A stretch of 64,000 nt of DNA from Ylistrum balloti (GCF_031769215.1 NW_026782173.1:806001-870000); one strand, 5' to 3'. Numbered from the stretch's first letter, positions 5,942-24,029 are shown. The notes: generated from the letters alone by a model not told the origin. Program-made: numbers and translations.

Positions 5942-6802
5942 CTACCACTTCACCTTGCCGGGGATGTATTTCTCCACGAGTGCACTGTAATAGGCCTGGA
6001 GTTCATCCACATCCGGCGTCACAGCGCTCTTAGTGTACAAGTCAAACTTGTTAAATTCATTGATCCAATCCTTCATCTCTTCGTCCTTGTTGTTACTCAA
6101 GTATCCGTAAGCCCCACTCGAGTGCCAGGGGTAGAATGAGTGGTACCGGATCATGTACAAACCCTCTTCCGGTATCTTGCATGTGTTGAGGTCAGAGGTT
6201 AAGACGCGGTACAAATATTCATCATGGCCCCATGACAAAAGAACTTTATCCAATCCGCAGTTTTCCTCATACATTCCCAGTTTTGTATTGTATTTTTCAT
6301 TTTTCATGTCCGGATTATCTTTGAAACTCTCCCGCCCGAAAACGATTCGATCGTCTGGGAGACAGCCTACAGGAAAAGTGTCCCCTACCGTGGACCATTG
6401 TGGCTCCCCCCAGTGGGCCATAACTTTGCCTGCGTCGTGGATCAGACCTACCACATGGAACCAGTCTTTGTCCGGGTGCGCCCTACGAATACCCTCGGCA
6501 GTTTGATAGCCGTGCAAGGAATTCGGCATATCAACATCAGGATCACTTTCATCCAAAAACGAGTCAAGGGAATTCAACGCTTCCATCATGGTCATTTCGG
6601 CGTGATTGAATTTGCAATATTGGTCGATCTTTCCCTGGACATATTCCACTGTCTGAAAAGTATGCATGCTTTTGTATGTGTCAATGACCCGAGCGGGACA
6701 CGTATGGATGTTAAAATTTCGATATTCTGTTTTGTCCTTGTACTCTGGTCGGTATTCCGAGGGATCGCTTAAAACTATCCGTTTCTGCACTGTCGAAGCC
6801 AT
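5942..6802 (-). CDS. MIOX: Myo-inositol oxygenase (inositol oxygenase), 286 aa, single coding exon
   Basis: Full-length ORF with family motifs DESDPDVD, HGYQTAEGIR, HDAGK, EPQWSTVGDTFPVGC, SWGHDEY, IRYHSFYPWH and KFDLYTK. The di-iron His/Asp ligands are present. Ends KYIPGKVKW, like animal MIOX. Confidence 0.97.
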   Translation of the reverse strand: MASTVQKRIVLSDPSEYRPEYKDKTEYRNFNIHTCPARVIDTYKSMHTFQTVEYVQGKIDQYCKFNHAEMTMMEALNSLDSFLDESDPDVDMPNSLHGYQTAEGIRRAHPDKDWFHVVGLIHDAGKVMAHWGEPQWSTVGDTFPVGCLPDDRIVFGRESFKDNPDMKNEKYNTKLGMYEENCGLDKVLLSWGHDEYLYRVLTSDLNTCKIPEEGLYMIRYHSFYPWHSSGAYGYLSNNKDEEMKDWINEFNKFDLYTKSAVTPDVDELQAYYSALVEKYIPGKVKW

Positions 6803-12066: not shown

Positions 12067-12371
12067 TTATTCTTGAAGAGGAAAGCGTAATGTAGTTTTG
12101 TAGGAGTTGTAACTTCCTCTACCCTTGATAACAAGTTGGTCGTTGTAAAGGTATGCTGTAGCGTAGGAATCGGTTTCAAGACTCTCTACAGTTCCGGGAA
12201 ATGTTATGTGCAATATACCGGAAAAATCTACACTACTTCCACCCTCGTGGTCATGACCAGCTAAGTAACAAACGACACAGTCACTGAAATCGGTTAAGAC
12301 CTCCATAGCATCTGTGCAGTTTAACAATAAATCCATATTGTTTGCGCTATGCTCAAATATAGGACAGTGAC
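12067..12371 (-). CDS. ADPRM: ADPRM paralog 1, coding exon 2 (332 aa total with exon 1)
   Basis: Acceptor ttttcaattttag| restores G-H-C-P; contains the CYLAGHDHEGG metal-ligand motif; TAA at 12067-12069. Exon sizes 694+305=999 nt, in frame. Confidence 0.93.
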
Positions 12372-12589
12372 CTAAAATTGAAAACAAACAAATAAATAAG
12401 TTACATATGATGCAAGGAACGATAATTGTAAAAACAACTGCCGGGTTTATGCTTCACTTTGAGTATACGTTTGCAACTACCCATGGAAACTCGTCTGATT
12501 GAAGCCTAATATTATGCAGTACATTTTCAATATTTACGTTGCCTCGCCGATAAATTTGAATTTTGTTGATTATGTAATACTGAACTTAC

Positions 12590-13283
12590 CCATGATTATA
12601 ACATTTACTCTCTTATTTGTAGCGTCCCTAAGGTGTTCCTTCAACCAGTCCATTTGTGTTCCTGATATTGCACCATTTAACTTAAGGAAACGACGACACA
12701 TTCCACGAAGTCCGTCAGGATCGTTCAAATTCTCCTTTGGATTATTGCCCTTTATTATTGTCTCGGCCTCTTTATAAGCAGGCGAGTCTTCTGACAATCC
12801 CAACATGCTTATTTCATAACAGTTAAGCACGACAACTTTCAACTTCCGATGTATGCTGAATGAGTAGTAAGATTTCCCCTTTGGACATGTGCATTGCGGC
12901 ATGTTACCACTAAATAGAGGGGTGCTCATGAGTTCTTCCTGTGTGAAATTATAGAGCTCATGGTTTCCCCATGTGTGATATATCGGACCCGGAAACGCTT
13001 TCAGTACTTCAAGAACCGTTCTTAAGGCACTTTCCGAAGCCTTCTCCTCTTTGTTGAATCCGTCGATGACATCACCAAGTTGAAGGACACAATTTGCTTC
13101 TTCCGCTGTCCAGTCTGATACGGCTCGTTGTAACAAGGTCAAGGCCTTTCGATAAAATCTTAATCGTGTTTTCCGGAAATTGTATCTATCTTCTATATCA
13201 GCATATTGTACATCCGCGATGATGCCCATCTTACACACCACTTCCTTTTCCTTTGTCAGTTCAGTGTTTCCGTTGCAATCCAT
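12590..13283 (-). CDS. ADPRM: ADPRM paralog 1 (Mn-dependent ADP-ribose/CDP-alcohol diphosphatase), coding exon 1
   Basis: Motifs GIIADVQYAD, YNF..TRLR.Y, QLGDVIDG and HTWGNHE of the ADPRibase-Mn metallophosphatase family. Donor ATG G|GTAAGT at 12589. Acceptor 16 nt upstream of the ATG. Confidence 0.95.
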
Positions 13284-14096
13284 ACTGGTATTTTTGCACC
13301 TGTAAAAAGCACCAGTAAATAATAACGGTCAAATTACATAATCATCATTATTTTGATAATGTGAAACAGCATAATGATGATTCGTCAACATATATTTAAA
13401 AATCCATCTATCGAAATCAAATTTGAATAAGAAATTCAAATAATACCTGAACATTTCAGTATCGGTATAAAGCTGACAACTGATACCAATTCCCAGTCTC
13501 ATAATATACATGCTGTACAATGAGCAAGGGGTCGGGAATCGGTTCAAAGCCCTGTAAAGTTGACTGATCATAAGATAGTGATTTTCCGCGGATAATTTGG
13601 ACCACTCAGACTAACTGAAATGGTACACTGAACGTGTGATTTACATACTATTTAGGCCTCAGTTTTTATGTCTATGTATATATTATGATGTAAGATTGGT
13701 GTTACTACAGACTTGAATGGTTCCGTAAAATTATTCGATATACATTGTCTATAAGTAAAACCCATTTCACAGCTTGTCCAAATACGACCGAATTTTTCAA
13801 CCTTATACCTTCATTATATTATTATCATTAATTGGACTAATGCAAGTCTATTGATATGTTACACGTACAGTGTGTGTATACATACACACGCTAGTGTTAT
13901 TGTGTGTGAACTACTCGCTATACATATATAATGTATCTCGATTGACATTTCATGTATAAACATAAACATAATTCAGTTAACGTTTAGTAAAACTATCTAA
14001 AGTCTTTTGCATGTCACATATACCAATCATGCTTAAACAGCTACTCTCGTACTTGTAAATCATATACATTTGTGGAGTAGTGTTCTATTAACCTAC

Positions 14097-14200
14097 CTGA
14101 CTGACCTCCGTCACCCTCTTTCCTTGCGTGGCTTTTGCTATCATTGAGGACCTGTTGACGTTGTTGACTAGTATCTGTTCAGACAATGACGTCAGCGGTG
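14097..14200 (-). promoter_or_regulatory. Candidate non-coding 5' exon of ADPRM paralog 1 with a full CRE palindrome (TGACGTCA, 14187-14194)
   Basis: Minus-strand donor CAG|GTAGGT at 14096. The acceptor at 13300-13301 requires an upstream exon. The GC-richer island contains TGACGTCA. The upstream boundary is not determinable. Confidence 0.35.
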
Positions 14201-16070
14201 CAGTTCATACTAAAACAAGTCACTAGCTTGACAACATAACAACTTCCAACTTCTCTCAAGTGTCACAGAAACACTAGGTCGGGGTGGAAACTACGGAAGG
14301 GAGATAACTCTAATATAAAACACACACGGAAACACTGTAATCTGATCTGGGTAAATAATGAATAAGGCATGAGCTACACGTAAATACAAGGACAGACATG
14401 TTGTATGTTACTAATATGCGTTAAAGCTAATTAACTGTATTGTCCATAAAACAATTTGCTTACTGAATTATTTACTTAAAAGTTATCATGGAATTATAAA
14501 GAAGTTTGTTGTATAGTCTGTTATATACAATGTACAATGTACACTGAAGCACAACGAAGCTTATTGCGGCGTATAATTCAAGCCTCGAGATAATTAGCAC
14601 CAGTGCACATGTCTCCTTAGCAACTCATTGTCAGCGAACTTTCCATGCACGAGTGACCTCTCTTGCATTACTAGGTTAATTTACAAATGTCGCCGTCACC
14701 CGAATATGAATGAAGAAATAAGTGAAATGGGACTTATTATGAAAAAAATTAATGTGTTTAAAAAGGAACGTTGTTATACTTTCCCAAAGAATGTCACTTA
14801 ACAATATTGTTCCTCTTCTTAAACATGAAAATAATGTTAATGGAATCATCTGTTTCATGCATGATTTGGTTCATAACTTACTCTGTTACATGTGACTGTC
14901 TCGTGTGACAATCTATTACTACAAGAAAGAGGACGAGATGAAAAAATCTTTGTGAATTGTGAAATTATCATCTTCCGGCCTTTAATCAAACGCCAATAAC
15001 AAAATTAAGCTTATCGTATGTCTTCGTCATACAACAACACTGTACGTCATGTAATATAACAAGATCCAACAGTTATTAGATACAAAACATTACAAAGAAA
15101 ATGTACCCGTGGTATATCAATTAGCGATTAGAAATTAGCTTGATTGGCAACGAGGAAAAATAAAGCAAAATTCAAAATCAACTGTAGTGGTATGATCATA
15201 ACAAAGCCGCTGGGTTCGATGTTTCACTTTTATTAAGAGAGAAACATTCCAGAAAAATACAGAGACAGACTTACTGACAAAAGAATCCAACCGTTCACAC
15301 GGAGAGAGAACAATAATAGAAAGACAGACACTTTCAACCAATCTTACAACTTCATCAAAGTCCGTCAAGTGTCACATGTCGAGTCTGTAGCTGACCACAA
15401 CTTACATACAACACACATACATACGTACAAAGCTAAAAACAAAGAAACGTACTCGACAACCAATTCAGTATATTGTACTAAACGACAAATTAATTTATTT
15501 TAAATCCAACATAATTTGACAATTATATTATAACTTAATATTTTTGACCTTGTTACATAACTACAAAAATAGCTATTAACTGGCCTGAGTTTAATAATTA
15601 AGTATATGTAGTTACTTTAAGTTGGAAAGTCAAGGTAAAGGATAAACAAAAATGACTCCCCCCTCCTCCCCTCAAATGGTTAGTTAGAGCGACTACGAGA
15701 CAAATGTTTGAAAATGTATAAAAGCCCACTATGTACACGTACCTGTATCAAGACTATAAGGAAAATTATATCACGTGAGATGAAGCTGCATTAATGCCGA
15801 TCAATACACAAGTTAACGTTTTGAAAAAAAGGTAATTAATATGGGACAGTCCTCGAGTTACCGTTGTATCTCGACATCATATTAACCTTGTCGTTAACTT
15901 AGGAACTTTCCAGTTAGTAACGTGTTAAATGACGTAAGGTCATTCCGTTTGATTATGATGTCACAATTCAAATCATGCCAACTTTTCTCATTATTGGTCG
16001 ACCAGTATATTACACTTGAAACATTAAATGAATTTTCCGCACTTGAAAACGTCTTTTTCTTAAGTTATAT

Positions 16071-16372
16071 CTAGCTGATTGGAAACTTGAGTTTTGCTTC
16101 GTGGGATGAGTAACTTCCCATGCCCTTTATGACTAATCGGTCACTGTAGAGGTAGGCTGTTGCATTAGCATCCATATCTTCACTTTCTATAACTCCGGCA
16201 AATGTTACGTGTAGTATACCGGAACTGTCCACGTAACTTCCGCCCTCGTGGTAATGACCGGCGAAGTAGCAGAGTACACACGCGCTGTATGTAGCTATTG
16301 CTGCCATGATTTCTGCGTAGTTTAAGCATAGAAACATGTTGTTTGTACTCTTCTCACAAATCGGAACATGAC
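16071..16372 (-). CDS. ADPRM: ADPRM paralog 2, coding exon 2 (329 aa total)
   Basis: Acceptor tttttcctatttaag| restores G-H-V-P; contains CYFAGHYHEGG; TAG at 16071-16073. Exon sizes 688+302=990 nt, in frame. Confidence 0.93.
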
Positions 16373-16702
16373 CTTAAATAGGAAAAATACAAGATTCATT
16401 AATTAGTTTCTGTACCTGGATCTGCCAGCGACAAACACATATTACGGATCAACAGTATTTGTCATTAGTTCAATGTAATGCGATCTGTTTAGAATTTAAA
16501 ATGAATTCGTCTCTCACTTGCTACATTGTCACGTTTAACTGAATTCGTTACAAAAAGTACGCAGTGACACGAGTTATATGATTTTAATATGACCGTAAAA
16601 CAAGGCAGAAAAAACGACGAAATTTCTACGTCATCAAATTGGATGTACAAACCGATTAATATTCATTAATATACACGCTCATATATTTATAAGAAAGCTT
16701 AC

Positions 16703-17390
16703 CCATTATGATGACGTTTTCCTGATCTTCTTCAGCCTTTTGTAAAATTTCTTTCAACCATTTCAGTTGGGAATTTGACACCATTCCATTAAATTTGACA
16801 AACCGACGATTTGATCCCTGCAATCCATCTGGATTGTTCAAACTCTCATTTGGATTATTTTTTGAGATCAGTTCATAGGCCTCTTTGTATTCTGCGGAGT
16901 CTTTTGGTAGACCCAACATACTTATTTCATAACAATTCAGTACCACAACTTTCAGCTTCCTGTGAATGTTGAACGAATAATACGTCTTTCCATCTGGGCA
17001 TGCGCACTGTGGCATGTTACCACTGAACAAAAGGGATCTTTTAAGCTCCTCCTGTGTGAAGTTGTACAATTCATGGTTTCCCCACGTGTGGTAAATTGGA
17101 CCCGGAAATAGATTTAAAATATCAATAACTGATGCAAGTGCACTTCCGGAAGCGTTGTGTACTGTGTTCAATCCATCTATGATGTCACCGAGTTGAAGAA
17201 CACAATCCACTCCCTTGATTGTCCAGTTGGTAACCGCTCGTTCGAGTTTACCAAGAGATTTCCTGTAATTTCTTAGTCGTGTTTTATGGAAGTTGTACCT
17301 TTCTTCTAAGTCGCCATACTGGACATCAGCGATGATACCGAAACTGCATTCTGCACCTAAACAAACTGATTCTGGACAATTCAGAGTCAT
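16703..17390 (-). CDS. ADPRM: ADPRM paralog 2, coding exon 1
   Basis: Motifs GIIADVQYGD, QLGDIIDG and HTWGNHE. Donor ATG G|GTAAGC at 16702. Acceptor ttattttccag| 5 nt before the ATG. Confidence 0.95.
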
Positions 17391-19910
17391 GATTTCTGGA
17401 AAATAAATATGTTATCTTTACATGATATATTTAGACAAATTATTTATGTATAACGGTAATAATACAAACGATTGTTATGTTACAATGAACATGGTTACTT
17501 TCAGACATGCTGATCGCTGATGCACTACCACGTGTATTTCTTAAAGTAGACTTAAATCGCCATGCATCATTAAGTATAGAAATAAAATTTTCAATGGTTC
17601 AAAGTGATAACAATAATCTTGTTATATACACTCATAGTTCATCAAATCTAGTAAACCAGTCTTTCGAGAATCTTACATATTGTATATGATTCGGTAAAGA
17701 TGTACAATCTGGACATGCCAGTAAAGGTATGACTGTGTTTATGGGTCACTCTTTATTATATACCGGATGTATCAACAAATTCAACTGCCACGTCACCGAA
17801 AATGATTTCACAACAACGTGTAAAATAAAGGGAGGCAACTCCCGTGAGTTTTTGTGGCCAACATAGGCAATGCCCACCCTCTAAATGAAACTTCGCTTTT
17901 CTTGCATACCAAAGACGATTAATAGCTCTCAAAACGAATCTAGTACTTTAAATTAATATTTATATAGGGTGACGTGACATGTAATTTTAATTTGTTTTAT
18001 AGAATGTCGTGTTATGACCTTAAAATCAACGGAACCACAAGTATCACTATTATGTCCGTCTACACAGAGTAACCAGACGTGGGAAACATCGGACAAATTT
18101 GAGACAGCGAGATTTGTACTCAAAGTATCATGCCAATATTGATGGACGGATATTATATAATTACAGAAATACTTCTCCATCCTCTAAGAAGAAAGAAGGA
18201 TACAAACTACACTTGTTAAGATTATACTACACTTAGATACATAGGCATTACACTAACCGTATTATATTTTCATTTCCGTTTGTATTTCATACCTACATTA
18301 AATATTATTTCACAAACAAAATGGTACAGTCCATTCCGAACATAATAACAGATAATTACAATCGTTATATTATAAAAAAAAATCAACATGACAAGCCATA
18401 TTGCATCAACATTAAAACAATTTTATTTTCCTTGAATACTTTCAGAATTTAACATTTCATGTCGTTTCCTTTAGATAAAAATATTTCTTATAAATCATTT
18501 GAAAGACATTTACATATTAATACTGTATTAGAAATATACAATTGGAGAAATGTATCACATGACATACACAACACAGATAAAACTTTAACCAAACAATTTT
18601 ATGTATCCCGCACTCCATTATTTTACTCCAGTTACTAAATGTCGTAAATTGATTAAAGATCAATTAGTGCATGCTCCATATCAATAAATACTTTCAACAA
18701 TTAGTTAGGATAGGATCACTCTATGGATTTCGTTTTATTTCATATCATTTGTAAGAGATGTAAAAATGTGTTTTCCATTACAAAAATACAAATAACTATT
18801 AAATAAAATGATTCTCAATCACAATCAACAGTTTTATTTCAGGAAATAGATATTTCAGGTGTTAACTACCGTCATACATTTTTTGAAGGATAAACAAGAA
18901 GCTTTTTATTAATACGCATAAAATCAACCTGCATTATGTTTTAAAACTGATGAACAAAAGCAAAGAAAAGTAGAAATACTTGTTTTAGAAGGGAGATAAC
19001 TCCCACAGCTAAGTCAATCATGACGAGATCAGGTTGAAATTGCATTAGACTTCCTCTTTTGTGTTATATACATGTTTTGATCAGTGTGAAGACACAATAG
19101 TAAGCATTAATAGAGGACTTAATAATGTAGACTAAACTATATAAATTGCATATAGAGGCACTTGATGTTCTGATTAGGCTAGGAAAGGACAAATGTACAT
19201 CGTAATTCAAATAAAAATATTGTGAAGTGTGGTGAACTTTTATAAGAAATATATAGAAAGAAAATTAAAATTACCCCTGAAACAGAAATATTTCGGACAT
19301 GTAAAGATAAAACTAAATTTGTAACATTGATAAGCTGACTGAATTAATTATCTACTTATATGAGAAGTACCTCAATGAAAAAAAAAAAAAAAAAAAAACA
19401 TGGGTCATTGTCACAAATGAATTATTGAATGACCATATACGACCGAGACAACCATTATTAAAAATAAAACGGGGAAAGTCATGAAACCTAAAAAATAAAA
19501 GTAGATGTATAGTTTTATCTACACCTATGTGTATTATTAACATGGTCCCTTAAACCTACCAACTTTCATTAAAATTCCCAAAGACAAAAAACCAAAACTA
19601 AAAAATTATGTCAAATTATTAATGTAAATGGGAATCAAATCAACAACGACAAATTACATCGGAAATAAAAGAAATAATTTAATACTACACTTCCAAGGTA
19701 AGAAAATAAAAAAGGGAATATTAGTCTCATATAACTATATAAACCAAAATGACTATTAGAATTGATTGAAAATAAATATTTGATAAAATCCGTTATAATT
19801 CATCCTGAAGTTAGATATCAAAATGAAAAAAGTCATGTGTTGCGGATATGTATATGGTATGATCTAAGTTTATGTAAACCAAACATGACCTGTCTGTCTT
19901 TTTTCTATAA

Positions 19911-20212
19911 TCATGTGATAGGGTATCTGAGTTTTGTTTCAAAGGAAGGATAACTCCCTTTCCCATGTATGGCGAAGCTGTCTTTGTAGAGGTAGGCTGT
20001 AGCATGGGCATCTGGTTCCGAACTTTCCACAGTTCCGGGAAAAGTCACGTGCAGAATTCCGGAACTGTCCACACAACTTCCGCCTTCGTGATCATGTCCG
20101 GCCAAATAACAAAGTACACATTCTCCGTGATTCGACAGTATTTTCAAAATGTCCTCATGGTCATAACATAAACATGCACTGTCTGCACTTCCCTCATGTA
20201 TGGATATATGTC
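19911..20212 (-). CDS. ADPRM: ADPRM paralog 3, coding exon 2 (333 aa total)
   Basis: Acceptor tttttgttttctag| gives GHISIHEGSADSACLCYDHEDILKILSNHGECVLCYLAGHDHEGG; TGA at 19911-19913. Exon sizes 700+302=1002 nt, in frame. Confidence 0.93.
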
Positions 20213-20791
20213 CTAGAAAACAAAAATATTGATATGTTTACCAGTCTTAAGAATATTTTACCTATATTTTCATATATACCATTTTATCAATCAATAATGC
20301 TATTTCATTAATTGGTTCTGATTTTTTAACAGTAAACAAACACGGAAATAAATATTTTGGCCCTTATCTAGCAGTTTACACACACAAATGTGTATCAAAA
20401 AGAATAAAGGTAATGCAAATCACGTTACCTACATATATGCATCGCTAAGCGTGAACCTCCAGATTGGCACTATGTTTAAAATAGGTTTTTGTACAGATAA
20501 ACATGAAGATTTGCTAAATCAAGTGGTTTAATCGCCGTAGGCAATATAAAACACAACACTGCTTGTACCTGACATGATATTTGACATCATTCATGATCAT
20601 TAAACAGAGAATTCGAAATAATGTCAACATTCTGTTGTTAAACATATACAACATGATGAAACCGATCCCTTCCAGAGCATGTCACACCGAAAGACACTTT
20701 GGTAGAGATAGGATCAAAGTGAAATAAGTTTTTCTCTGTAAACAAAATGTCCTGAATCAAGACGTGGTAAAGTAAAATTATCACAACATAC

Positions 20792-21491
20792 CAATAATGA
20801 TAACATTAGTCTCGTTCTCTCTGGCCTCTTGTAGGGTCTCGTTTAACCACTGCAGTTGTAAGGAAGACAAAGTACCATTAAATTTCACAAAACGCCGATC
20901 TGTTCCAGTAAGACCCACCGGAGAGTTAAGATCCTCGTTTGGATTTTTATCTCTGAGCATTTTTTCTGCCTGTGTATACTCTTCAGATCCCTCTGGTAGT
21001 CCAAGCATGCTTATTTCGTAACAATTCAATACCAAAACCTTTAACTTCCTGTGAACATGGAATGAGTAGTAGGACTTTCCTTCAGGACATGTGCACTGAG
21101 GCAAGTTACCGCTAAACAGAACTGAGTTCATTAGTTCTTTCTGTGTGAAGTTGTAGAGTTCATGATTTCCCCACGTGTGGTAAACCGGAACCGCAACATG
21201 TTTAAGCGCTTCGGTTACTGTTGCTAAGGCACTATCGGACGCATTCTCAGCTTTGTTGAACCCATCGATGATGTCACCAAGTTGAAGGACGCAGTCAACA
21301 TTTTCAGTGCTCCAATCCGTAACGGCCCTTTTCAGTAAGGTCAAAGCCTTTCGATAAAACCGTAAACGTGTTTTGGTGAAATTGAAACGATCCTCTAGAT
21401 TTGCATACTGTACATCAGCGATAATGCCAACTTTACATATGGGTTCTTGATGATTTTGCGTGGATGATTCAGATGTACAGTTTGTTAACAT
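20792..21491 (-). CDS. ADPRM: ADPRM paralog 3, coding exon 1 (start MLTNCTSESS at 21491)
   Basis: Motifs GIIADVQYAN, QLGDIIDG and HTWGNHE. Donor ATT G|GTATGT at 20791. A strong acceptor tcgtcttcttttccag| lies 18 nt before ATG 21491, so the longer ORF-track start at 21563 is probably intronic. Confidence 0.94.
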
Positions 21492-21935
21492 ATCCAAGAC
21501 AATGTTGATCTGGAAAAGAAGACGATTCCGTGAAAAGAACATAAACTTAATAACAAATCTCAAAAAGACATTTTGCCTATTCGTGTGCTAATTTTCGCCA
21601 CAATATTTAAAATACAGTTTTCACTGCTGTAAATACACAGATATTTACTCAAGAAAGAATGCATGTACCAATCAAGATATGTTTCAGAGATAAAGATTTA
21701 TTGTGCATGTTATGAAGTAATCGAACAAGTATTTTTTTAAAATTGACCTCATGGTTCTGCTGTGTTCGTAAGCGATCGTTACCATTGTTTAACATATCAC
21801 ATTATCTACACAGAATCATTGCAGATGTCAATTAATAAGATAGAATATAGTTTTTGTTGTCACAATACTAGACCCCAGTAATGATAATATCTGAATGTGC
21901 ATTTTATGGTATGTACATTGTTGTACTCCGAGTAG

Positions 21936-22290
21936 TCGGACAATCTGTCATCCACATTCTGGTGTGTGGCACATTGAATGGATGGATGATGGATCATTCA
22001 CTTTCTAGTGTGTGGCACATTGAATGGTTGGACGATGACTCGTCCACATTCTGGTGTGTGGCACATTGAATGGATGGACGATGACTCGTCCACATTCTGG
22101 TGTGTGACACATTGAATGGTTGGACGATGACTCGTCCACATTCTGGTGTGTGGCACATTGAATGGTTGGACGAAGACTCGTCCACATTCTGGTGTGTGGC
22201 ACATTAAATGGTTGGACGATGACTCGTCCACATTCTGGTGTGTGGCACATTGAATGGTTGGACGATGACTCGTCCACATTCTAGTGTGTG
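21936..22290. repeat. 46-bp minisatellite, ~7.5 units, each with a 7-bp-stem hairpin
   Basis: Consensus tgtggcacattgaatggttggacgatgactcgtccacattctggtg. The cgtcc motif recurs at 22041, 22087, 22133, 22179, 22225 and 22271 (period 46). Internal inverted repeat TGGACGA-tgac-TCGTCCA. Confidence 0.97.
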
Positions 22291-23071
22291 TGTAACAAAA
22301 TGAGTAAAAAAATGGGTTTAATGGTAATTTTGGAATGGTGTGTATCGTAGAGAGCAGCATCTTAGTTTAAAGTACATCAGGTCAAAAGTCAGTTAATCCC
22401 GTGAGTGATAGATAGTGATGCACGCCTGATAACGGGCGGGGTGTGTACCCAAGTGGTGAAGCACCGTGGCAGAATATCGCCATTATGATTGATCAGGACA
22501 GGTAGATGCTTTCTTGTATGCCTCGCGCTGGCGAACACATTTGTAAGTAAACAAGATAAGAAACAATGTATAAGGTAGATCAAAGATGGGAAGTTGATAA
22601 CGGGTACTCCTAGTCGCACGTGCCTTCATAATTAGATGCTCCGGGGGCTGGGTTATTGTTGTCCAGTTGAGACTAGGCTTAAATTAAGTATTTGGGTATT
22701 ATTTATACAAAGATAATTGCCAGCAGAAGTGTAGTCGAGTCTGGGATCGAGTAGCTAGAGAGAGTTGGGAGTCGGACGTGCAGACGGGCAGAGTCCCGTA
22801 TGGGACCTGCTCCGCGATGGAGTGGGTCCTGGCCAAGTTGGCCCATGGACATTTGTATGGAACTCTTTGATATGGACGGGCAGGTTTTTCGTTGTTGTCT
22901 GCCTTACACAGGTGTTTAGTTTTGGTGCCACGACATGATGCTGTATGTTGATTAGGAACTATCTTTTGTAATGGATACTAACGCGAAGTACTAACTATGG
23001 AAAACCACTATACGATGAAATAAAAGTTTCGGTCAACCCAAGTAAACACTGTGTTTAGTCATTGTGTTACA
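22291..23071 (+). mobile_element. Solo LTR (781 bp) of an LTR retrotransposon inserted into the minisatellite
   Basis: Begins TGTAACA and ends TGTTACA (inverted TG...CA termini). 5-bp target-site duplication GTGTG at 22286-22290 and 23072-23076. AATAAA at 23019-23024. GC-richer than the flanks; no internal coding region. Confidence 0.88.
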
Positions 23072-23202: not shown

Positions 23203-24029
23203 GGGCCATATATTGGAAGACTACCCAGTGTAAGTACGTTATGTATGATCGTAGCAAAATATTTAAATGCTCTCTGTACTAAAATGTTTAGTTCTGTTTT
23301 CAGACTTTCAAAAACAAAGTAGTGGAAAGGGTTTTTGGGAAATGTTGCCTAAACATGCAACCAGCCACACATAAAAATGTACTATACTAATATAGTTTGC
23401 ATTTACTACACCTGTTGTCTCACAGGAAAAGTATGTTTATAAAATATTTAATTAATAATTGCAGAAGGACCATTTAGTTTCATATCTATTGTTATCACCA
23501 CAATAATACAATTCTACCAACAAAGTTACTTTATTAATCAAATCTAAAATATCTTTTAAAAACTTGCCTAATCTACATCAGGGACGCTATCTACGCCCCT
23601 GTCTACATGTATATACATACTACATAGTCTGTCTGAAGTAGATTTAGAGAACACACCTGAAGTGGAGATTGTAGATATGCCCTCACGTTATGGTTGAGTA
23701 AGGACAATCGCTGATGTACACACAGACGTGGGAGTTCAAGTATGAGAGCAGCCCAAACCAGTTTCATTCAGAATCCTCTATGACAAGGCTCCTTACCCAC
23801 TTCTGATGATACGTTTGTTTTTACTCAAGTGTTCCGGTTAAGGGGCATAACTCTAACATATTTGTTCATGCCGGTTCAGAGTGGCATTTTTGAGACGCTT
23901 CCCTAATCTCATCAAGCAATCTCTAACAAGAAAAACAGAAACAGTTTAGGTAATCCCGTTATGTAATTCAGCCATATTACTCATGAATGTTTCATGACTT
24001 ATCAGATAATACGATAAAGATGTATACAA

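What the first reader, a model, noticed from the sequence alone, without database searches (positions are those of the whole stretch)
12067..21491. Intact tandem triplication of ADPRM: a possible diversified 'eraser' set for NAD-derived signalling nucleotides
Seen: three full-length paralogs (332/329/333 aa) within 9.4 kb, with no stops or frameshifts. All keep the D-x-Q, GDxxD, GNHE, GH and GHxH metal ligands plus the Phe37- and Arg43-equivalent residues. By eye they are only about two-thirds identical, so the duplications are old and retained. Known: vertebrate ADPRM is normally single-copy and hydrolyses ADP-ribose, CDP-alcohols, 2',3'-cAMP and, in some species, cyclic ADP-ribose. ADPR and cADPR are products of TIR/SARM1/CD38-type NADases, and bivalves have expanded TIR repertoires. 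Inference: the cluster may be a subfunctionalised module that turns over different immune or stress second messengers.
Basis: partly seen in the sequence, partly recalled or inferred. Interest (0 to 1): 0.75.

Follow-up and report, generated by a model that had tools for sequence, protein, structure and literature searches.

The report
Scallop ADPRM gene triplet, pocket-diverged
Three intact neighbouring copies of an ADP-ribose-splitting enzyme gene sit in this scallop genome; all scallops examined share the same trio, and the copies differ most in the parts of the enzyme that choose its substrate, so they probably do different jobs, but an immune role is unproven.

Summary

- **Origin:** the order C-B-A recurs in Pecten, Mizuhopecten and Argopecten. 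A tree gives three orthogroups inside one scallop-only clade, so the triplication dates to the scallop stem.
- **Constraint:** each lineage is under purifying selection (dN/dS 0.07-0.21).
- **Active site:** all metal and catalytic residues are kept.
- **Divergence:** it peaks in the two substrate-contacting elements. The position matching human Cys253, which gates cyclic-ADP-ribose hydrolysis, is Asp/Asn in A, Phe in B and Cys in C.
- **Copy B:** it also changes the residue next to Arg43 and the x of GHxH.

Differing substrate range is therefore plausible. By the human steric data, however, A and B should hydrolyse cADPR worse, not better. I found no evidence for a link to immunity or TIR signalling: no RNA runs, no NADase or TIR genes among the called neighbours, no literature. 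This is an ordinary lineage-specific family expansion that yields a neat, testable enzymology hypothesis.

The parts
12590..13283 (-). ADPRM copy A, coding exon 1 (aa 1-231 plus first base of Gly232)
   Evidence: ORF and GT donor; whole model equals P0001, 332 aa; Pfam Metallophos; 2nxf E 1.6e-42
12067..12371 (-). ADPRM copy A, coding exon 2 with stop; Asp245 (12333..12331) is the human Cys253 equivalent
   Evidence: AG acceptor, phase 1; residue mapping
16703..17390 (-). ADPRM copy B, coding exon 1; has Asn next to the Arg43 equivalent (TRLRNYR)
   Evidence: model equals P0010, 329 aa
16071..16372 (-). ADPRM copy B, coding exon 2 with stop; Phe243 (16334..16332) is the Cys253 equivalent; GHYH motif
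23657..23767 (-).
   Evidence: tblastn with P0008; ATG, GT donor; conserved in Pecten and Mizuhopecten with indels in multiples of three
20792..21509 (-).
   Evidence: model equals P0008, 376 aa
19911..20212 (-). ADPRM copy C, last coding exon with stop; Cys290 (20174..20172) is the retained Cys253 equivalent

Best explanation
[quoted passage not shown] Shown: two tandem duplications in the scallop stem lineage produced C, then A and B. Gene order, the two-exon core structure and the reading frames have been kept in four scallop genera under purifying selection. All dinuclear-centre ligands and the catalytic Arg43 and His111 equivalents are kept, so each copy should still be an active phosphoanhydride or phosphodiester hydrolase. 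Inferred: the copies have divided or changed substrate preference. Paralog-specific, ortholog-conserved changes concentrate in the two family-specific elements that line the substrate cavity. C is the conservative copy: it has the shortest post-duplication branch, the best match to zebrafish ADPRibase-Mn, and keeps Cys253 and Phe210. It probably keeps the ancestral ADP-ribose/CDP-alcohol profile. It also carries a conserved, unstructured, net-positive N-terminal extension that may direct it to an organelle. A (Asp/Asn253) and especially B (Phe253, Tyr/Phe at the x of GHxH, Asn beside Arg43) have a narrower or chemically altered pocket floor. [quoted passage not shown] I expect A and B to have shifted preference away from cADPR, towards other or smaller substrates.
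For: Family: Pfam PF00149; 2nxf matches at E 1.6e-42 to 1.4e-79; the AlphaFold model of C has pLDDT about 98 over the domain and superposes on 2nxf at TM 0.94, rmsd 1.6 A, far ahead of the next hit. Identity with NCBI models P0001, P0010 and P0008 of Ylistrum balloti. Order C-B-A on one strand in Ylistrum, Pecten, Mizuhopecten and Argopecten. ML tree: orthogroups A 100/99, B 100/99, C 98/91; all scallop sequences form one clade at 100/99 apart from Mercenaria, Mytilus and Ostrea; post-duplication stems are A 0.21, B 0.20, C 0.10. dN/dS between orthologs: A 0.07-0.15, B 0.13-0.21, C 0.11-0.16; paralog dS above 2. Residue mapping uses the published mutagenic primers and alignments: Q27, R43, N110, H111, H241, H278 and H280 are kept in all. 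Position 253 is D/D/N/D in A, F in all four B, C in the C group. Among 59 other family members it is C 26, T 19, N 4, D 2, S 1, G 1 (three are gapped there) and never F. Divergence hotspot: residues 241-260 of A have 30% identity between groups against 67% within groups (overall 66% against 79%); the second hotspot, 171-195, holds the Leu196 equivalent. Extension exon of C; pLDDT below 50 for residues 1-46.
Against: No enzyme assay and no expression data exist for any copy. No RNA run was found, so expression of all three rests on gene models and on purifying selection. Residue roles are carried over from human mutants at about 40% identity, and every scallop copy has also lost the otherwise near-invariant Trp256 equivalent, so the pocket geometry may differ from the human model. 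Position 253 in A is not strictly fixed (Asn in Mizuhopecten). The x of GHxH varies across the family (D, A, T, S, Y), so B's Tyr/Phe there is not unique. The targeting role of C's extension is weak: simple charge, hydrophobicity and amphipathicity measures were indecisive, and the Argopecten extension differs in sequence.
Confidence: 0.7

Rival explanations
1. Redundant copies kept for dosage: the three genes encode enzymes with essentially the same substrate profile. The sequence differences are neutral drift in tolerant surface or loop regions, and retention reflects demand for more enzyme or different promoters only.
For: All catalytic and metal residues are identical. Mytilus edulis also carries a tandem pair, about 73% identical, that keeps Cys253 and Trp256, which shows that duplication of this gene can persist without pocket change. 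A gene-conversion tract between B and C in Argopecten shows some interchangeability of the C-terminal part.
Against: The differences are not scattered. They peak in the two substrate-contacting elements and are conserved within each orthogroup across four genera. Phe at position 253 is unique to group B among 70 family members. Retention of all three copies with dN/dS of 0.07-0.21 and saturated paralog dS is hard to explain by dosage alone.
Confidence: 0.17
2. One reading: the trio is an eraser set for NAD-derived immune or stress messengers (ADPR, cADPR and its isomers) made by the expanded bivalve TIR, SARM1 and CD38-type NADases, with each copy tuned to a different messenger.
For: [quoted passage not shown] The three copies differ exactly at the residue that gates cADPR hydrolysis in the human enzyme.
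Against: No expression evidence is available. The called flanking genes include no NADase or TIR gene: only MIOX lies downstream, and nothing is called for 10 kb upstream. No paper in the library links ADPRM with TIR domains. In the human enzyme, smaller residues at 253 favour cADPR and the larger Val disfavours it, so Asp and Phe argue against better cADPR turnover in A and B.
Confidence: 0.1
3. One or more copies are dead or artefactual: unexpressed pseudogenes that happen to be open, or assembly duplications.
For: No RNA data could be laid on the locus.
Against: All three are intact in four genera, with strong purifying selection in each orthogroup. The copies are about 40% diverged. An independent DNA run yields separate contigs for B and C at equal depth.
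Confidence: 0.03

Closest known systems
Vertebrate ADPRM / ADPRibase-Mn (rat, human; zebrafish structure 2NXF)
   Same: Same fold (TM 0.94 to 2nxf). About 40% identity over the full length. Same D-V-Q, GDxxD, GNHE, GH and GHxH motifs. The family-specific s2s3 element with Phe37 and Arg43 and the h7h8 element with Leu196 are present.
   Different: There are three tandem paralogs here; my own recollection, not tested here, is that vertebrates have one gene. All scallop copies lack the Trp256 equivalent. A and B replace Cys253 with Asp/Asn and Phe. B also changes the residues matching Tyr44 and Thr279. C has a 43-aa N-terminal extension. The core has two coding exons, whereas PMC5773619 places residues 37 and 196 in exon 2 and 252 and 253 in exon 4 of the human gene. 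No biochemistry is available.
Engineered human ADPRibase-Mn specificity mutants (F37A+L196F+C253A/G, V252A, C253V; PMC4334965, PMC5773619)
   Same: Natural variation among the scallop paralogs hits the same pocket positions that were mutated to re-aim the human enzyme: 253, 252, 250, 279 and 210.
   Different: The engineered cADPR-specific enzymes carry smaller residues (Ala, Gly) and lose Phe37. The scallop copies keep Phe37 and Leu196 and carry larger or charged residues at 253, so the expected direction of change is the opposite.
Single-copy or two-copy ADPRM of other bivalves (Mercenaria mercenaria, Mytilus edulis)
   Same: Same two-exon core with the intron in the same place. 43-48% identity.
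   Different: Mercenaria has one copy within 10 kb either side. Mytilus has its own tandem pair, about 73% identical, which keeps Cys253 and Trp256. Neither shows the three-way pocket split.

Membership tests
ADPRibase-Mn-like family (ADPRM) of metallo-dependent phosphatases | Calcineurin-like metallophosphoesterase domain | tested here: met
   PF00149 above the gathering score for exon 1 of A, B and C
ADPRibase-Mn-like family (ADPRM) of metallo-dependent phosphatases | Closest solved relative is the family's structural prototype 2NXF, over the full length and by fold | tested here: met
   phmmer E 1.6e-42 (A exon 1), 6.3e-65 (B), 1.4e-79 (C); Foldseek TM 0.94, rmsd 1.6 A, next hit 29 orders of magnitude weaker
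ADPRibase-Mn-like family (ADPRM) of metallo-dependent phosphatases | First motif D[V/I]Q (Gln in place of the superfamily His), plus GDxxD, GNH[D/E], GH and GHxH | tested here: met
   All present in A, B and C and in all 11 scallop proteins scored; B has GH[Y/F]H
ADPRibase-Mn-like family (ADPRM) of metallo-dependent phosphatases | Family-specific s2s3 element with invariant Arg43 and aromatic residue 37 | tested here: met
   YNF..TRLR in all copies; mapping through the published primers
ADPRibase-Mn-like family (ADPRM) of metallo-dependent phosphatases | h7h8 element with the widely conserved Phe210 | tested here: inconclusive
   The element is present. Position 210 is Phe in the C group but Leu in three of four A and three of four B sequences
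ADPRibase-Mn-like family (ADPRM) of metallo-dependent phosphatases | [quoted passage not shown] | not testable with these tools
   Needs recombinant enzyme assays
   The called neighbours are only MIOX downstream and nothing within 10 kb upstream. Window 33768-64000 was checked only for long ORFs, and the two put to Pfam matched no family
   No RNA run holds the locus
   Only an indirect inference is possible: bulkier residues at 253 lowered cADPR hydrolysis in the human enzyme

The most novel reading that the evidence does not exclude
The scallop trio is a natural specificity series. Copy B has a Phe253, Tyr279 and Asn44 pocket unlike that of any other family member examined. It would have acquired a substrate outside the known ADPRM range, for instance a distinct cyclic or NAD-derived nucleotide. 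Copy C would be organelle-targeted. Together they would partition the turnover of nucleotide messengers in scallop stress or immune signalling.
Probability: 0.12. Interest if true: 0.7.

Novelty: new member of a known kind. Interest (0 to 1): 0.35.

Why it matters
ADPRM is a poorly understood enzyme. Its physiological substrate is unsettled, and the papers read here characterise only rat, zebrafish and human forms. One of them states that the family is absent from invertebrates (PMC3407115); the scallop, clam, mussel, snail, amphioxus, crinoid and tunicate hits show that this is out of date. The scallop trio offers a ready-made natural experiment. Three enzymes about 60% identical share a catalytic core and differ at the positions that human mutagenesis showed to steer substrate choice. 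Expressing them would test whether those rules hold across the family and could reveal new activities. Beyond that, this is a normal lineage-specific tandem expansion already present as automatic gene models.

Tried and rejected
- **RNA evidence:** Laying it gave contigs only, which helps against an assembly artefact but says nothing about expression.
- **Literature:** searches for ADPRM with scallop, mollusc, Pectinidae or TIR domain found nothing relevant. One search failed on a syntax rule.
- **NCBIfam:** only sub-threshold hits to a bacterial cAMP phosphodiesterase model, which is uninformative.
- **Targeting of C's extension:** charge, hydropathy and hydrophobic-moment heuristics were indecisive. 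No dedicated predictor was available.
- **Ostrea locus:** the look-up for P0025 found no record.
- **Earlier scan notes:** a word search for NADase or TIR notes in this genome was empty.
- **Branch or branch-site selection tests:** not run. No PAML or HyPhy was available, and paralog dS is saturated.
- **Pseudogene, haplotig and B-as-pseudoenzyme readings:** considered and rejected on the evidence.

Full report
**What is in the sequence**

Between 12067 and 21491 the minus strand carries three genes built the same way. Each has a long first coding exon and a roughly 300-nt second exon, separated by a GT-AG intron that splits a Gly codon after its first base.
- Pairwise identities are 62.7%, 61.6% and 60.5%.
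- tblastn finds no other copy or fragment in the 64 kb.

A word-based protein search shows the window comes from the scallop Ylistrum balloti. [quoted passage not shown] A and B equal P0001 and P0010, but the model for C (P0008) is 376 aa.
- The extra 43 residues come from an upstream exon at 23767..23657: an ATG preceded by an in-frame TGA, 37 codons, then a GT donor. It is spliced in phase 0 to an acceptor at 21509. My three-exon model translates to P0008 exactly.
- The exon is homologous in Pecten maximus and Mizuhopecten yessoensis. It is clearly better conserved than the flanking promoter and intron, its indels are 3 and 6 nt, and the TGA-ATG and the donor are kept. It behaves as coding sequence.

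**Family membership**

- Each first exon passes Pfam's Metallophos threshold.
- The only strong solved relative is 2NXF, the zebrafish ADPRibase-Mn prototype: E 1.6e-42 for exon 1 of A, 6.3e-65 for B and 1.4e-79 for C.
- An AlphaFold model of C, built on a 62-sequence alignment, has pLDDT about 98 across the domain and below 50 for residues 1-46.
- The model superposes on 2NXF at TM 0.94 and rmsd 1.6 A, with the next hit 29 orders of magnitude weaker.

**Origin and retention**

Four scallop genera carry the same trio in the same order and orientation, C then B then A: Ylistrum (L001), Pecten (L002), Mizuhopecten (L003) and Argopecten (L004, L006).
- A maximum-likelihood tree of 24 sequences recovers three orthogroups: A 100/99, B 100/99 and C 98/91.
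- It places all twelve scallop sequences in one clade (100/99), apart from Mercenaria, Mytilus and Ostrea.
- A and B are sisters (90/86). The post-duplication stems are 0.21, 0.20 and 0.10 for A, B and C.
- The triplication therefore arose by two tandem duplications on the scallop stem, before these four genera diverged.
- Pairwise dN/dS between orthologs is 0.07-0.15 (A), 0.13-0.21 (B) and 0.11-0.16 (C), with dS of 0.5-1.4. Paralog dS exceeds 2. All three lineages are under purifying selection.
- Contigs from an independent public DNA run cover B and C separately at similar word depth, with about 1% SNPs. This excludes an assembly artefact.
- Mercenaria has one copy within 10 kb either side.
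- Mytilus edulis has its own tandem pair, about 73% identical.

**Where the copies differ**

I mapped the human residues studied by mutagenesis through the published primer tables (PMC4334965 S1 Table; PMC5773619 Table 2) and alignments.

Kept in all 11 scallop proteins scored:
- Gln27, Phe37, Arg43, Asn110 and His111;
- the GH histidine;
- both histidines of GHxH.

Differences by position:

| Human position | Group A | Group B | Group C | 59 other family members |
|---|---|---|---|---|
| Cys253 | Asp, Asp, Asn, Asp | Phe in all four | Cys | C 26, T 19, N 4, D 2, S 1, G 1; never F |
| x of GHxH (Thr279, near the northern ribose of cADPR) | Asp | Tyr or Phe | Asp | variable: D, A, T, S, Y |
| Residue after Arg43 | Phe | Asn | Phe | Tyr, Arg or Phe in most |
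| Residue before Leu196 | Asn | Ser | Asp | variable |
| Phe210 | mostly Leu | mostly Leu | Phe | mostly Phe or Tyr |
| Trp256 | Leu | Leu | Tyr | Trp in 49 of 55 |

A sliding-window comparison puts the strongest excess of between-group over within-group divergence at residues 231-265 of A. This is the h10 segment around position 253, where identity is 30% between groups against 67% within them (overall 66% against 79%). The second peak is at 171-195, inside h7h8 around Leu196. Both segments are substrate-contacting according to PMC4334965.

**How it most likely works**

- Shown: three intact, constrained, catalytically complete ADPRM genes of scallop-stem origin.
- Inferred: they differ in substrate preference. 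C is the conservative copy, and A and B are derived copies with an altered pocket floor.
- Direction: in the human enzyme, C253A and C253G raise cADPR hydrolysis. [quoted passage not shown] Asp and Phe at this site therefore suggest that A and B are worse cADPR hydrolases. They may be better suited to other or smaller substrates.
- The N-terminal extension of C is net positive, poor in acidic residues and predicted to be disordered. This fits a targeting presequence, but simple heuristics do not settle it.

**The immune-eraser idea**

Its basis is external knowledge. Mammalian ADPRibase-Mn acts on ADPR and cADPR and is enriched in rodent immune cells. Nothing found here adds to that.
- No RNA run was available.
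- The called neighbours include no NADase or TIR gene. Only an intronless MIOX lies 5.3 kb downstream, and nothing is called for 10 kb upstream.
- No paper in the library joins ADPRM to TIR signalling or to molluscs.

It remains a speculative minority reading.

**Novelty and verdict**

- The genes are already in NCBI as automatic models. I found no published description of the triplication or of the pocket split.
I reached it independently and tested it.
- PMC3407115 states that the family is absent from invertebrates; contradicts this.

Overall this is a normal lineage-specific tandem expansion of a known enzyme family. It comes with an unusually clean, testable specificity hypothesis, and I rate its interest as moderate to low.

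Noticed in passing
window 5942-6802 (-): An intronless 286-aa myo-inositol oxygenase gene (Pfam MIOX, E 5e-109) lies 5.3 kb downstream of ADPRM copy A on the same strand. I see no obvious functional link.
   Followed up: partly
window 21951-22290: A 46-bp minisatellite (7.4 copies, 93% matches) sits in intron 1 of copy C. It creates the spurious 120-aa ORF at 21998-22360, which has no Pfam match.
   Followed up: partly
L004:11171-11387 and L006:15918-16134 (Argopecten irradians): The 3' part of B's last exon is 92.6% identical at DNA level to that of C, and the last 58 aa are identical. This looks like a gene-conversion tract between paralogs, and it makes Airr_B's C-terminus C-like.
   Followed up: partly
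L007:10001-11496 and 17900-19872 (Mytilus edulis): An independent tandem pair of ADPRM genes is 73% and 69% identical over the two exons. Both keep the Cys253 and Trp256 equivalents, so tandem duplication of this gene is not confined to scallops.
   Followed up: partly
all scallop ADPRM copies, e.g. window 12324..12322 (A, Leu248): The Trp matching human Trp256 is present in 49 of 55 other family members, including plant and oomycete sequences. In every scallop copy it is replaced: Leu in A and B, Tyr in C. This implies a remodelled h10 helix on the scallop stem.
   Followed up: partly
window 16338 and 20085: The independent DNA run X1 carries nonsynonymous variants. G>T at 16338 gives Asn241Lys in B, two residues before the pocket Phe243. 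T>G at 20085 gives Glu319Asp in C.
   Followed up: partly
L002:19522-19620 (Pecten maximus): A duplicated fragment resembling the first 33 aa of copy A (85% identity) lies 1.6 kb upstream of the Pecten A gene. The called genes use it as an alternative first exon.
   Followed up: no
literature: [quoted passage not shown] The protein search returns clear members from bivalves, gastropods, amphioxus, a crinoid and a tunicate.
   Followed up: partly
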